DNA of 64,000 nt. Source: Octopus sinensis (Eukaryota). This document shows, piece after piece, positions 27,707 to 30,258 of the stretch (position 1 is the stretch's first letter; each line of letters opens with the position of its first letter). The translations under genes and the position numbers were made by a program. The stretch lies in assembly GCF_006345805.1 (NCBI RefSeq), contig NC_043000.1, positions 434,001-498,000 of the forward strand, in the 5' to 3' direction. Under the pieces are notes generated by a model. The model was not told where the DNA came from and searched no databases. It saw only the letters and a list, made by a program, of their open reading frames with translations.

Positions 27707-30258
27707 GAGATCTCCCAGGAATGACACGATGCGAACGAGGACAGGCGAGGTCCCTTTTGAACCTAATCAACACTCTGTACATAGAGCAAGTAATACTCCA
27801 ACCAACCAGGGCAGGTAGCATACTGGATCTCTGCTTCACAAATAATATGGATCTCATCCATAATGTGAAAGTGACACCGACACTACTCTCGGATCACAAC
27901 ATGGTAAAGCTGACCATGTACGGGCCAAAGGAAAGCATGGACATGCAGCCTACAAGAAACTCTCAGAATCTTTCCAGCTTGAACTTCCATAAGGCAAACT
28001 GTAAACAAATTGAGAAAGAGATCCTCAAACAAAACTAGCCTGAATGTCTCTCCTCGCCAGACATCGACATGAAAATTCAACAATTCATGTCTGTAATGCA
28101 AGCCATATGCTACAAATGTGTCCCAGAGAGAAAGGCCACTCTACACAAGAACAAAATCCCCAGAGAGAGGAAAATTCTAATGAGACGGCGTACAAAAGTT
28201 TCAAATCGCCTAAACAAGCAAATTGAAAGCAGTGAAAAGTCCCGCCTGAAAATAAAACTGTTGGAAATTGAAAATTGTCTGCAACTCTCCCATGAAAAAG
28301 AAAGAGCAGACAAAGAAGCCTGGGCTATAGACAACATAAAATCTAACCCCAGAGCTTTCTACAGGTATGCCAAAGAAACAGCTACGGTGCACTGTAGGAT
28401 ATGGCCACTCCTTGAAAAGGATGGCACACTCACAGGAAATCCAATGAGGATAAGTGAAATACTAAATGAGCAATTCAAGAGTATTTTCATTCCACCCCTA
28501 GGGCATTTTCAAGTCAGCAATCCAACTGACTTCTTTACCACTGCAGATATAAAATCAGAGGCAGCGATGATTGATTACATCAATATAAAGGAAGACGATG
28601 TAATAAAGGCGATAGCTGACATGAAAACAAACTCAGCTACTGGCCCCGATGGATTCCCAGCAGTCCTTCTAAAAGTAGGTAAGAGAGTCCTAGCAAGACC
28701 ACTGCAGTTCCTCTTTCAGAGCTTCCTTGCAACTGGCAAACTTCCAAGAAAACTGAAGGAAGGTAAAATATGCCCTATTCATAAAGGAGGTAGCAGAGCA
28801 GAGGCCAAGAACTACAGACCTATCTCTCTGACCTCACACATCAGCAAGGTCATGGAACGAATAGTCAGAAGGGAACTAATCACCTTCCTTGAAGAAAATG
28901 ACTTGCTGCCTGACATCCAACATGGTTTCCGACTAGGAAGAAGCTGCTTAACTCAACTCCTACAACACTATGACTGGGTGCTGAAACGACTGCTCAACCA
29001 CTCAAATGTGGAAGTCATATATCTCGACTTTGCAAAGGCCTTTGATAAAGTCGATCATGGAATGATATGTCACAAACTGCGTGATCTTGGAATAGTTGGA
29101 AAATTGGGAGAATGGCTTCATGACTTTCTGAAGGATAGAAGTCAGGTGGTAGTAGCAAATAGTGAGCGGTGTTCCGCAAGGCACTGTTTTGGGACCACTA
29201 CTGTTCATAAAGGCCCTCTCAGACATGCCCTCAGCCGCGCAAAGAGCCACGATCACAAGTTATGCAGATGATACAAAAGTTTCACAGGCAATACAGAACC
29301 CTGAAGACACTAAGCACTTGCAATGTGAGCTGGACAAAATATACAAGTGGGCTGAAAAGAATAGCATGCAGTACAATGCTGAAAAGTTTCAAGCTTTATA
29401 CTATCAGCATGCAAAACTAAATGCAATATCCAATAAATACACTGGACCTGGAGGGATTGCAATCCCAGAGGCACAATCAGTGCGAAACCTGGGTATTTAC
29501 ATGAGTGATGATGCAACTTTTCACGTGCATGTTGCTAAATTGGCAATGAAATGTAGGCGGCTGACCGGATGGATTCTTAGAACCTTTAGAATAAGAGACC
29601 AGGAAACCATGATGGTCCTTTGGAGGACACTTGTCCTAAGCCACTTTGACTATTGCTCTCAGCTTTGGTCACCATCCAGTGTCAAGTTAATCACAGAACT
29701 TGAGGCGATCCAACGAAGCTACACGAAGAAGATAGCCTCTGTGCAGCATATAAGCTACTGGGAAAGACTCAAGATATAAAGACTCTATTCCTTAGAGCGT
29801 AGGCGAGAAAATATGCCATAATATACATCTGGAAGATACTAGAAGGACTTATCCCAAACTTTGGCATCGGAGTACACAAATGCTAGAACTGGGCGCCACT
29901 GCATAGTGCCAAGGACTCCAAAATTTGCCATCAACATGTAGGACAAGATACTGTGATAGCCTGGGCTTCAGAGGCCCAGAGCTCTTCAATATCCTCCCGA
30001 AGAACCTGAGAGACCTGCATGGGGTGGATGCAGATGTCTTTAAAATAAAACTGGATCTCTTCTTGCCAGGTGTCCCAGATTAACCAACTTCACAGCAGGA
30101 GGTGCAGATGAGGGCAGCTGCATCGAACTCTTTCATGCACCAAATGGCAATTGCTAAAAAGCATTCGTGAAGTAAAATCATGTAGCAACACCAAATGGCG
30201 GTGCCCCAGCATGGCCACAGCTCGTGAGCTGAAACTAGATAAAGATAAAGATAAAGAA
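27707..30258 (+). mobile_element. 5'-truncated CR1-group (CR1/L2/Crack/Daphne-like) LINE
   Basis: APE C-terminus (PTR..ILDLCFTN...SDH). RT motifs NYRPISLTS, QHGFR..RSC.TQLL, YLDFAKAFDKVDH, GVPQGTVLGPLLF, YADDTK. 3' UTR ends in a stem-loop plus (GATAAA)n. Confidence 0.95.
28069..29779 (+). pseudogene. Disrupted LINE ORF2 reverse transcriptase
   Basis: ORFs 28069-29271 and 29162-29779 are joined by a frameshifting deletion at ~29160. Premature stops at 28036 and 29777. Confidence 0.92.

What the first reader, a model, noticed from the sequence alone, without database searches (positions are those of the whole stretch)
30190..30258. SINE B and the CR1-group LINE share a 3' end with a compensatorily rewritten stem-loop
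Seen: the LINE ends ggcggtgccccagcatggcca-CAGCTC-gt-GAGCTG-aaactag. SINE B ends ggcggtgctccagcatggccg-CAGTCA-aa-TGACTG-aaacaag (e.g. 7269-7282). The flanks are nearly identical; the stem sequence differs but both are perfect 6-bp hairpins at the same position. Established: stringent-type LINEs recognise a 3' stem-loop shared with partner SINEs (UnaL2/UnaSINE1, Kajikawa and Okada). Inference: this identifies the mobilising LINE family of the most abundant SINE in the window and the RNA structure it reads. The terminal repeat differs among users of this tail: (GATAAA)n, (AATC)n and (AAGAGTA)n.
Basis: partly seen in the sequence, partly recalled or inferred. Interest (0 to 1): 0.72.

Follow-up and report, generated by a model that had tools for sequence, protein, structure and literature searches.

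The report
Octopus SINE and LINE shared tail
The commonest short retrotransposon in this octopus-like sequence ends in the same ~45-base, two-hairpin RNA tail as a group of CR1-like LINE elements, the ordinary way such parasites borrow a LINE's copying enzyme; the LINE copy in the window is a cousin of the SINE's likely driver, not the best match.

Summary
The dead, 5'-truncated LINE at 27721-30258 and 16 SINE copies share GGCGGTGCYCCAGCATGGCC, followed by a hairpin whose stem differs (CAGCU/AGCUG against CAGUC/GACUG) but still pairs.

- The shared 20-mer is itself a hairpin (HP1, with a G.G mismatch), so the tail is two adjacent hairpins, then AAAC, then a microsatellite.
- "SINE B" is only the 3' half of a tRNA-headed, CORE-like SINE with an internal (TA/TG)n tract.
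- The "(AATC)n user" is a 64-nt tail-only LINE insertion, and its empty site is also in the window.

Related LINE copies from Octopus sinensis and ENA contigs carry the same tail with three HP2 stem versions, all pairing (72/72 cells). One O. sinensis LINE has exactly the SINE's stem, the same first loop and a similar 8-mer repeat. It matches the SINE tail better (87.5% over 56 nt) than the window LINE does (80.4% over 51 nt). So the LINE group is correctly identified, but the mobilising family is not.

HP1 also recurs just after ORF2 in 13 of 75 distant LINE relatives from marine metagenomes, against 0.2 expected.

The same kind of result was published for bivalve CR1/SINE pairs in 2016. This is a new member of a known kind.

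The parts
27721..30170 (+). Dead, 5'-truncated CR1-like LINE ORF2 remnant. It holds the end of the AP-type endonuclease, the reverse transcriptase in two frames, and the C-terminal domain. There is an in-frame stop at ...PGVPD*, and the original stop TGA is at 30168-30170.
   Evidence: Pfam Exo_endo_phos_2 and RVT_1. ORFs listed. tblastn to the O. sinensis LINE at 52-65% aa identity. Translation.
30171..30196 (+). Short spacer of 26 nt between the ORF2 stop and the tail module.
30197..30216 (+). Hairpin 1 (HP1): GGC-G-GUGC [CCCA] GCAU-G-GCC. It has 3 bp, a G.G mismatch, then a G.U pair plus 3 bp.
   Evidence: MFE fold, RNAalifold, pair counts, enrichment in independent LINE 3' UTRs.
30218..30231 (+). 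Hairpin 2 (HP2): CAGCU [CGUG] AGCUG, the stem the finding is about.
30232..30238 (+). A-rich trailer AAACTAG between HP2 and the terminal repeat.
   Evidence: AAAC/AAC follows HP2 in most relatives
30239..30262 (+). Terminal microsatellite (ATAAAG)x3 plus degenerate AAGAAG, running into (AT)n.
6639..6702 (-). Tail-only, 5'-truncated LINE insertion: HP1 with one extra C in the loop, the same HP2 and AAACTAG as the window LINE, then (AATC)n. It sits inside another repeat whose uninterrupted paralogue lies at 970-1145(-).
   Evidence: A similar truncated copy is in O. sinensis at L085:17096-17134(-).
6881..7310 (+).
7512..7566 (+). SINE tail (5'-truncated copy lying directly after the previous SINE).
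   Evidence: (71.3 bits)
1401..1455 (-). SINE tail
   Evidence: 66.2 bits
12743..12800 (-). SINE tail (HP2 loop expanded)
   Evidence: 54.1 bits
17201..17255 (-). SINE tail
   Evidence: 62.7 bits
17617..17671 (-). SINE tail (5'-truncated copy)
   Evidence: 67.4 bits
23625..23679 (+). SINE tail
   Evidence: 54.0 bits
37060..37114 (+). SINE tail (HP2 decayed)
   Evidence: 56.3 bits
38646..38700 (-). SINE tail
   Evidence: 63.1 bits
40925..40981 (-). SINE tail (HP2 decayed)
   Evidence: 54.9 bits
41990..42044 (+). SINE tail, truncated about 10 nt upstream of HP1.
   Evidence: 61.2 bits
45003..45055 (+). Old, diverged SINE tail
   Evidence: (29.4 bits)
47096..47150 (+). SINE tail
   Evidence: 67.2 bits
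50683..50737 (-). SINE tail (5' arm of HP1 decayed)
   Evidence: 47.3 bits
55679..55732 (+). Degraded SINE tail
   Evidence: (41.7 bits)
58695..58749 (+). SINE tail
   Evidence: 58.5 bits

Best explanation
The feature is the 3' recognition module of a group of CR1-like ('stringent') LINE families in an octopod genome, copied onto the genome's dominant tRNA-headed, CORE-like SINE.

The module starts about 0-30 nt after the ORF2 stop and has four parts:
- HP1: 3 bp, a G.G mismatch, a G:Y pair plus 3 bp, and a loop NCCA.
- One nucleotide, then HP2: 5 bp and a loop of 3-5 nt.
- An A-rich trailer (AAAC...).
- A short tandem repeat.

Inferred mechanism, by analogy with UnaL2 and ZfL2 and not tested here: ORF2 protein binds the hairpins of the RNA that encodes it, nicks the target, and starts reverse transcription in the terminal repeat. 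A pol III SINE transcript ending in the same module is taken in trans.

HP1 is conserved in shape and partly in sequence across distant relatives, so it is probably the main protein contact. HP2 keeps its shape while its stem letters differ between sister LINE families (CAGCU/AGCUG, CAGUC/GACUG, CAGCC/GGCUG).

The SINE carries the CAGUC version, which also occurs in an O. sinensis LINE (locus L002). The SINE's tail therefore most likely derives from, and is served by, an L002-like family with 8-mer (TAARAGAR)n repeats. The window's own LINE copy is a dead member of a sister family.
For: Shown:
- Shared tail: 13 matches against 0 expected; 18 model hits in the window.
- Two-hairpin fold: MFE -18 kcal/mol, z = -2.8 and -2.65. 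RNAalifold predicts the same two helices.
- Six octopod-type tails (window LINE, SINE consensus, O. sinensis L002 and L085, ENA contigs L003 and L004): 72/72 cells paired, 4 pairs changed on both sides, 1/500 shuffles as good, and slid controls 18-45% paired.
- L085 rewrites the outer stem of HP1 (CAGU...ACUG) and L087 changes it to GGU...ACC. Both still pair.
- The tail belongs to the LINEs. It lies at the same place after ORF2 in six independent LINE copies.
- Independent test of HP1: the strict descriptor hits 13 of 75 metagenome LINE 3' UTR windows. Dinucleotide shuffles give 0.2 (max 2 of 200), reverse complements 0, and upstream coding windows 0.
- A hairpin of at least 4 bp starts 0-3 nt after HP1 in 19/21 tails, against a shuffled mean of 5.7 and max of 11.
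- Partner: the SINE tail against L002 is 87.5%/56 nt (E 2e-14), and against the window LINE 80.4%/51 nt (E 1e-4). All 22 SINE copies have the CAGUC stem. Repeat units are SINE TAAAAGAR, L002 TAAGAGAR, L004/L085 TAAAAGAA and window LINE ATAAAG.

Established elsewhere:
- Stringent LINE ORF2 proteins recognise their cognate 3' stem-loop (PMC4176376).
- The CR1 3' hairpin plus microsatellite is regarded as the RT recognition site (PMC8665684).
Against: - Function is inferred by analogy only. Nothing here shows binding or mobilisation.
- Each LINE family is represented by one decayed copy, not a consensus.
- No LINE tail is identical to the SINE consensus. L002 differs in the HP2 loop (AUUU against AAAU), the trailer and the repeat (49/58, against 46/58 for the window LINE, a modest margin).
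- The species of the ENA and JGI contigs is unknown.
- The CR1 label rests on domain content, the form of the 3' end and a remembered C-terminal motif, not on an RT phylogeny.
- The 20-sequence HP1 alignment was selected by a descriptor that demands pairing. Its 100% pairing is circular. Only the enrichment test is independent.
- Only 13-21 of 75 distant relatives fit the descriptor, and some (L005, L088) have a continuous stem without the G.G mismatch.
Confidence: 0.72

Rival explanations
1. One reading: the window's LINE family is the SINE's mobilising partner, and the HP2 stem was compensatorily rewritten between partner and SINE. The enzyme would then read shape, not letters.
For: The tails are 80% identical over 51 nt, with identical HP1 stems and the same spacing. 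HP2 stem letters vary freely across the clade while the hairpin persists, so recognition tolerant of HP2 sequence is possible.
Against: A LINE with the SINE's exact stem, first loop and repeat type exists (L002). None of the 22 SINE copies has the window LINE's stem. The window LINE's terminal repeat (ATAAAG) differs from the SINE's 8-mer, whereas partner pairs such as UnaL2/UnaSINE1 share the repeat (my own knowledge of Kajikawa and Okada 2002). ZfL2 proteins recognise their cognate stem-loops strictly (PMC4176376).
Confidence: 0.18
2. Promiscuous use: HP1 plus the terminal repeat is what the enzyme needs, and HP2 is only a spacer or stabiliser. Any co-resident family of this LINE group, including the window's, could then move the SINE. 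This is compatible with much of the best explanation and differs only on partner specificity.
For: HP1 is the part conserved across distant relatives. HP2 stems and loops are unconstrained in sequence and length, at 3-8 bp.
Against: All SINE copies keep a single HP2 version, and the HP2 helix is kept by double changes between families. This suggests HP2 is under selection rather than dispensable. The terminal repeats differ between the window LINE and the SINE.
Confidence: 0.25
3. Artefact: the LINE's last ~60 nt are a nested or chimeric SINE fragment, or the resemblance is chance.
For: The window is crowded with SINE copies, and tails often lie next to each other.
Against: The LINE's HP2, trailer and repeat differ from all 22 SINE copies. 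The same LINE-type tail occurs as a separate tail-only insertion with an empty site and in O. sinensis. Five other LINE copies from independent contigs carry the homologous module at the same distance from the ORF2 stop. Chance expectation is 0.
Confidence: 0.02

Closest known systems
CR1-14_CGi LINE with BivaCORE-SINE1 / BivaV-SINE2 in bivalves (Nishihara et al. 2016, PMC4824008, section 11)
   Same: A mollusc CR1-type LINE and tRNA-derived SINEs, including a CORE-SINE, share 3'-terminal sequences. The authors note that these form conserved stem loops with compensatory mutations between the SINE and the LINE, and take this as evidence of partnership.
   Different: The host class differs (cephalopod, not bivalve). 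The sequences could not be compared because figures and supplements are not held. Here the compensatory changes lie between sister LINE families, and the SINE matches one of them. A second hairpin with a G.G mismatch is traced into distant relatives.
UnaL2 / UnaSINE1 (eel) and ZfL2-1 / ZfL2-2 (zebrafish), stringent L2-clade LINEs (Kajikawa and Okada 2002, from my own knowledge; Hayashi et al. 2014, PMC4176376)
   Same: A shared 3' tail with a stem-loop followed by short tandem repeats. In those systems ORF2 protein recognises the cognate stem-loop and the SINE is mobilised in trans.
   Different: Those are L2-clade elements with one characterised stem-loop, and they were tested experimentally. 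Here there are two adjacent hairpins, a CR1-like ORF2 C-terminus, and no experiment.
Amniote CR1 3' end: hairpin plus 8-nt microsatellite (ATTCTRTG)n (Suh et al., PMC4316615; Galbraith et al. 2021, PMC8665684)
   Same: No poly(A). The 3' UTR is a hairpin followed by a microsatellite, mostly an octamer, held to be the RT recognition site. Copies are severely 5'-truncated.
   Different: The hairpin and repeat sequences are unrelated. The window LINE has a 6-mer and a sister subfamily a 4-mer. The two-hairpin layout with a G.G mismatch is not described in the passages I read.
Octopus CORE-SINEs OR1/OR2 (Ohshima and Okada 1994; cited as CORE-SINEs in PMC4824008 and PMC4758252)
   Same: A tRNA-derived octopus SINE with a CORE-type central segment. 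The window SINE has ACCTTGGGCAAGT..., the start of the CORE motif as I recall it.
   Different: I could not obtain the OR1/OR2 sequences, so identity with either is untested. I found no paper in the searchable library that names their LINE partner.

Membership tests
Stringent-type LINE/SINE pair with a common 3' tail | The SINE and the LINE share tens of nucleotides at the 3' end. | tested here: met
   About 42-45 nt plus the repeat; 80-87.5% identity to five LINE tails.
Stringent-type LINE/SINE pair with a common 3' tail | The shared region forms a conserved stem-loop. | tested here: met
   Two hairpins: MFE fold, RNAalifold, 72/72 cells paired with 4 doubly changed pairs.
Stringent-type LINE/SINE pair with a common 3' tail | The partner LINE and the SINE end in the same short tandem repeat. 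| tested here: not met
   For the window LINE it is (ATAAAG)n against the SINE's (TAAAAGAR)n. It is nearly met by other families: L004/L085 (TAAAAGAA) and L002 (TAAGAGAR).
Stringent-type LINE/SINE pair with a common 3' tail | Trans-mobilisation of the SINE by the LINE's ORF2 protein depends on the stem-loop. | not testable with these tools
   Needs a retrotransposition or binding assay.
CR1-clade LINE | ORF2 holds an AP-type endonuclease and a reverse transcriptase. | tested here: met
   Exo_endo_phos_2 (E 1.4e-4, below Pfam's cutoff, because only the end of the domain is left) and RVT_1 (E 3e-14 and 5e-11).
CR1-clade LINE | The 3' end is a hairpin plus a microsatellite (typically 8 nt), with no poly(A). 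| tested here: met
   Hairpins plus (ATAAAG)n in the window. Relatives L002, L003, L004, L085 and L087 have 8-mers. Criterion as given in PMC8665684.
CR1-clade LINE | The RT domain falls in the CR1 clade, rather than L2, Rex1, Jockey or CR1-Zenon, in a phylogeny with reference elements. | not tested
   No reference LINE library was at hand. The nearest named hits are only 'X-element'-type names. O. vulgaris is reported to hold 13 recently active CR1 families (PMC13282606).
CR1-clade LINE | Severe 5' truncation of copies. | tested here: met
   The window copy starts inside the endonuclease. Tail-only insertions of about 64 nt and about 45 nt also occur.
CORE-SINE (octopus OR1/OR2) | A tRNA-derived head with pol III A and B boxes. 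| tested here: inconclusive
   Box-like motifs TGGCTGTGTGG and GGTTCAGTCCC appear in 8 of 9 heads. ARAGORN and Rfam tRNA do not call the head.
CORE-SINE (octopus OR1/OR2) | A CORE central domain. | tested here: inconclusive
   26/27 aligned positions, with two gaps, to the start of the MIR core as I recall it. This is a lead from memory, not a database test.
CORE-SINE (octopus OR1/OR2) | Sequence identity with the published OR1 or OR2 consensus. | not testable with these tools

The most novel reading that the evidence does not exclude
The HP1 hairpin is a pan-clade recognition element of a large group of CR1-like LINEs that spans several marine invertebrate phyla. Its layout is 3 bp, a G.G mismatch, a G:Y pair, 3-4 bp, and an NCCA-type loop. 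The adjacent HP2 stem acts as a family 'barcode' that decides which co-resident LINE family a SINE can exploit. Octopus SINE expansion, which makes up about 12% of the genome, would then be tied to one specific CR1-like family rather than to the RTE or L1 elements that have received the attention.
Probability: 0.25. Interest if true: 0.55.

Novelty: new member of a known kind. Interest (0 to 1): 0.38.

Why it matters
- SINEs make up about 4-12% of octopus genomes. In the latest O. vulgaris annotation 893 of the 900 recently active SINE families are 'unclassified', and no LINE partner is discussed (PMC13282606; PMC12988792).
- Showing that the dominant SINE ends in a CR1-type two-hairpin module says which enzyme family drove that expansion.
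- It also gives annotators a compact structural signature (HP1-HP2-AAAC-repeat) for 3'-anchoring both LINE and SINE copies.
- The natural stem variants among sister LINE families form a ready-made mutant series for asking whether stringent LINE proteins read the shape or the sequence of each hairpin.
- The principle itself is textbook. A near-identical observation exists for bivalves (PMC4824008).

Tried and rejected
- **Argonauta hians LINE locus (L001).** The copy is 3'-truncated and has no tail.
- **Exact look-up of the window's own ORF** to learn the source record. Not on record.
- **Scan of viral contigs for the 17-mer tail pattern.** There were 35 hits, all covering only the seed positions of the model. 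These are chance matches in phage DNA.
- **Rfam.** Nothing on the tail. The sub-threshold miRNA and scaRNA hits lie on microsatellite and are noise.
- **ARAGORN.** It finds no tRNA genes in the window, so the SINE heads are too diverged.
- **MAFFT alignment of 13 diverse tails (A3).** It was not structure-consistent in HP2 for L043 and L044, so I did not use it for counts.
- **Model R1 built from the octopod tails only.** It finds just a few distant tails at a good E-value: L022, L021, L051, L057, L050, L012 and L026. I used a descriptor scan with shuffles instead.
- **The '(AATC)n element' as a third SINE.** Rejected, because a paralogue of its upstream sequence without the insert lies at 970-1145.
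- **SINE body upstream of HP1 derived from the LINE 3' UTR.** Rejected, because similarity starts only about 3-5 nt before HP1.
- **Literature searches for the tail sequences and for an octopus SINE partner LINE.** These found nothing. Gilbert and Labuda 1999 and Albertin 2015 are not held.
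Full report
**What is at the coordinates**

The window reads as octopod DNA. The best protein relatives of its LINE come from Octopus sinensis and Argonauta hians.

A LINE remnant lies at 27721-30170 on the + strand. It holds the last part of an AP-type endonuclease, a reverse transcriptase split over two frames, and a C-terminal domain with an in-frame stop. The copy is therefore 5'-truncated and dead. 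The original stop codon (30168-30170) is followed by these elements:
- 26 nt of spacer
- GGCGGTGCCCCAGCATGGCC at 30197-30216
- A at 30217
- CAGCTCGTGAGCTG at 30218-30231
- AAACTAG
- (ATAAAG)x3

The SINE copies end GGCGGTGCTCCAGCATGGCC-G/A-CAGTCAAATGACTG-AAACAAG-(TAAAAGAR)n. The shared 20-mer occurs 13 times against 0 expected. A covariance model of the whole tail finds 18 copies in the window.

**Corrections to the description**

1. ViennaRNA folds both tails into two adjacent hairpins, and RNAalifold does the same on six tails.
   - HP1 is the 'nearly identical flank' itself: GGC-G-GUGC, loop YCCA, GCAU-G-GCC, with a G.G mismatch.
- HP2 is 5 bp with a 4-nt loop.
2. 'SINE B' is the 3' half of a longer element.
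   - All nine heads found are followed by a B-type tail 225-350 nt downstream in the same orientation.
   - A head consists of GGCGCAGGAGTGGCTGTGTGGTAAG...GGTTCCGGGTTCAGTCCC and then ACCTTGGGCAAGT....
   - An internal (TA/TG)n tract separates head and tail.
   - The head has A/B-box-like motifs, and the next segment resembles the start of the CORE domain as I remember it.
   - Octopus OR1/OR2 are listed as CORE-SINEs in the literature. I could not obtain their sequences.
3. The SINE's terminal repeat is an 8-mer.
4. The '(AATC)n user' at 6639-6702(-) is only 64 nt long: HP1, HP2, AAACTAG and (AATC)n.
   - It is inserted in another repeat, and a paralogue at 970-1145(-) runs straight through the site.
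   - It is a tail-only, 5'-truncated LINE insertion of the window LINE's tail type with a different microsatellite.
   - A similar fragment is present in O. sinensis.

**Related LINEs**

I fetched loci that encode relatives of the ORF2. Their tails compare as follows.

| Locus | Source | HP1 | HP2 | Trailer and repeat |
|---|---|---|---|---|
| Window LINE | window | GGC-G-GUGC CCCA GCAU-G-GCC | CAGCU CGUG AGCUG | AAACTAG, (ATAAAG)n |
| L002 | O. sinensis; 52-65% aa identity to the window LINE | as the SINE, loop UCCA | CAGUC AUUU GACUG | AAAUAUA, (UAAGAGAR)n |
| L085 | O. sinensis | CAGU-G-GUGC UCCA GCAC-A-ACUG | CAGCC ACAU GGCUG | (UAAAAGAA) |
| L003 | ENA contig | GGU-G-GUGC ACCA GCAU-G-GCC | CAGCC AACUC GGCUG | |
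| L004 | ENA contig | as the SINE | CAGCC ACU GGCUG | (UAAAAGAA)n |
| L087 | ENA contig | GGU-G-GUGC UCCA GCAU-G-ACC | CAGCC AUAU GGCUG | |

L002 has the SINE's stem exactly. L085 has a fully rewritten outer stem in HP1 that still pairs.

On the six-sequence alignment A5:
- All 72 pair cells are standard pairs.
- Four pairs show changes on both sides.
- 1 of 500 shuffles reaches the observed pairing and covariation.
- Sliding the partners gives 18-45% pairing.

**Which LINE serves the SINE?**

All 22 SINE tails examined (16 in the window, 6 in O. sinensis loci) have the CAGUC/GACUG stem, apart from scattered decay. BLASTN of the SINE 3' half against the LINE tails gives:

| LINE tail | Identity / length | E-value |
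|---|---|---|
| L002 | 87.5% / 56 nt | 2e-14 |
| L004 | 82.5% / 57 nt | |
| L003 | 82.9% / 41 nt | |
| Window LINE | 80.4% / 51 nt | 1e-4 |
| L085 | 80% / 50 nt | |

The window LINE is also the odd one out in its trailer and its repeat unit. The stem difference therefore marks sister LINE families, and the SINE carries the version of an L002-like family.

The margin is modest (49 against 46 of 58 positions), and each family is represented by one decayed copy. I put about 0.6 on 'L002-like rather than window-type' within an overall 0.72 for the whole account.

**Depth of conservation**

A protein-profile scan of JGI metagenome contigs returned 80 loci with ORF2 C-termini 38-49% identical to the octopus one. 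Their 3' ends are varied but typically end in short tandem repeats.

I scanned for HP1 with a descriptor taken from the octopod tails: NNN-G-G-NNN, a loop of 3-5 nt, NNNN, G, NNN, with all stem positions paired. Results:

| Sequence scanned | Windows with a hit |
|---|---|
| 75 windows just after ORF2 | 13 |
| Dinucleotide shuffles | 0.2 on average (max 2 of 200) |
| Reverse complements | 0 |
| Upstream coding windows | 0 |

A looser form of the descriptor hits 21 windows against 3.0 expected. The stems differ widely: GGU/ACC, AUC/GAU, ACU/AGU and GCU/GGC for the outer stem, and GACA/UGUC, GACU/AGUU, GUCC/GGAU and GAAG/CUUC for the inner stem. The G.G (or G.A) mismatch and the following G:Y pair stay in place. 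The 100% pairing is circular, because the sequences were selected for pairing. The enrichment test is the independent evidence.

A hairpin of at least 4 bp begins 0-3 nt after HP1 in 19 of 21 tails, against a shuffled mean of 5.7 and a maximum of 11 in 500. It is usually followed by AAAC or AAC and then the repeat. Some relatives (L005, L088) have a continuous stem instead.

**Mechanism**

*Shown:* the anatomy, its conservation, and its presence on both LINEs and the SINE.

[quoted passage not shown] 2014; Kajikawa and Okada 2002, from my own knowledge). For CR1, the hairpin plus microsatellite is regarded as the RT recognition site.

On this basis HP1 is the likely common contact and HP2 a family-variable part. 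The terminal repeat is where priming would occur. The tail-only insertions and the strong 5' truncation fit target-primed reverse transcription with low processivity.

**Comparison with the literature, and novelty**

- Nishihara et al. 2016 reported that bivalve BivaCORE-SINE1 and BivaV-SINE2 share their 3' ends with CR1-14_CGi. They noted conserved stem loops and compensatory mutations.
- Later work lists CR1, CR1-Zenon, L2 and Nimb as SINE partners in bivalves, with 35-61 bp of shared tail at 72-95% identity.
- For octopus I found no open paper that names the SINE's LINE partner or shows this tail.
- The 2026 O. vulgaris repeat annotation leaves nearly all active SINE families unclassified. 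It lists 13 active CR1 families.

This is a new member of a known kind. It is useful for octopus transposon biology but not surprising to a specialist. The clade label 'CR1-like' rests on domain content, the form of the 3' end and a remembered C-terminal motif. No RT phylogeny was done.

**Verdict**

- Observation: confirmed.
- Interpretation: partly supported.
- Interest: 0.38.

Noticed in passing
The order is a tRNA-like head, a CORE-like segment (ACCTTGGGCAAGT...), an internal (TA/TG)n microsatellite of variable length, the 3' half, and the LINE-type tail. All 9 heads found are followed by a tail 225-350 nt downstream. Headless copies start in or near the internal microsatellite.
   Followed up: yes
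window 6639-6702 (-) and 970-1145 (-): A 64-nt tail-only LINE insertion lies inside another, unidentified repeat. A paralogue of that repeat 5.5 kb away lacks the insertion and so serves as an empty site. The target reads ...ACAAAATCTTATA..., so the (AATC)n end of the insert has microhomology with the target (AATC).
   Followed up: partly
45 nt downstream of the 18 tails in the window (e.g. 30263-30290, 7315-7350, 17160-17200): 8 of 18 tails are followed within 45 nt by (TA)n of at least 4 units, against 12% of random windows (binomial P about 7e-4). Either insertion prefers (TA)n targets, or (TA)n grows at the junction.
   Followed up: partly
window 7241-7566 (+) and 17201-17671 (-): SINE copies lie head-to-tail directly after another copy's terminal repeat, in two separate pairs. 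This suggests re-targeting of the repeat or (TA)n left by an earlier insertion.
   Followed up: no
L002:8751-9128 (O. sinensis); compare L004:733-735 and window 30168-30170: The ORF2 stop lies 0-27 nt before HP1. In the L002 copy the open frame runs through HP1 and ends at the TGA inside HP2. The 3' UTR of these LINEs is therefore essentially just the two hairpins and the repeat.
   Followed up: partly
window 24222-25243 (-): ORFs of 137 and 118 aa contain ...FNADETGLYWKTLP..., which I recall as typical of pogo/Tigger-type DDE transposases. This is probably a DNA-transposon remnant. It was not searched against any library.
   Followed up: no
window 26100-27500: A dense block of compound microsatellites ((TATG)n, (TAGA)n, (CATA)n, (TCTA)n) lies immediately upstream of the truncated LINE. 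It hides the LINE's 5' junction, so no target-site duplication could be defined.
   Followed up: no
L085:720-777 (-) and L085:1779-1834 (+) (O. sinensis): A SINE subfamily has CCTTTC(A/G)(G/C) instead of GACTAAAG immediately before HP1. One copy has the CCCA first loop of the window LINE type but the CAGU(A/C) stem. This shows subfamily structure in the SINE tail that a genome-wide census could exploit.
   Followed up: no
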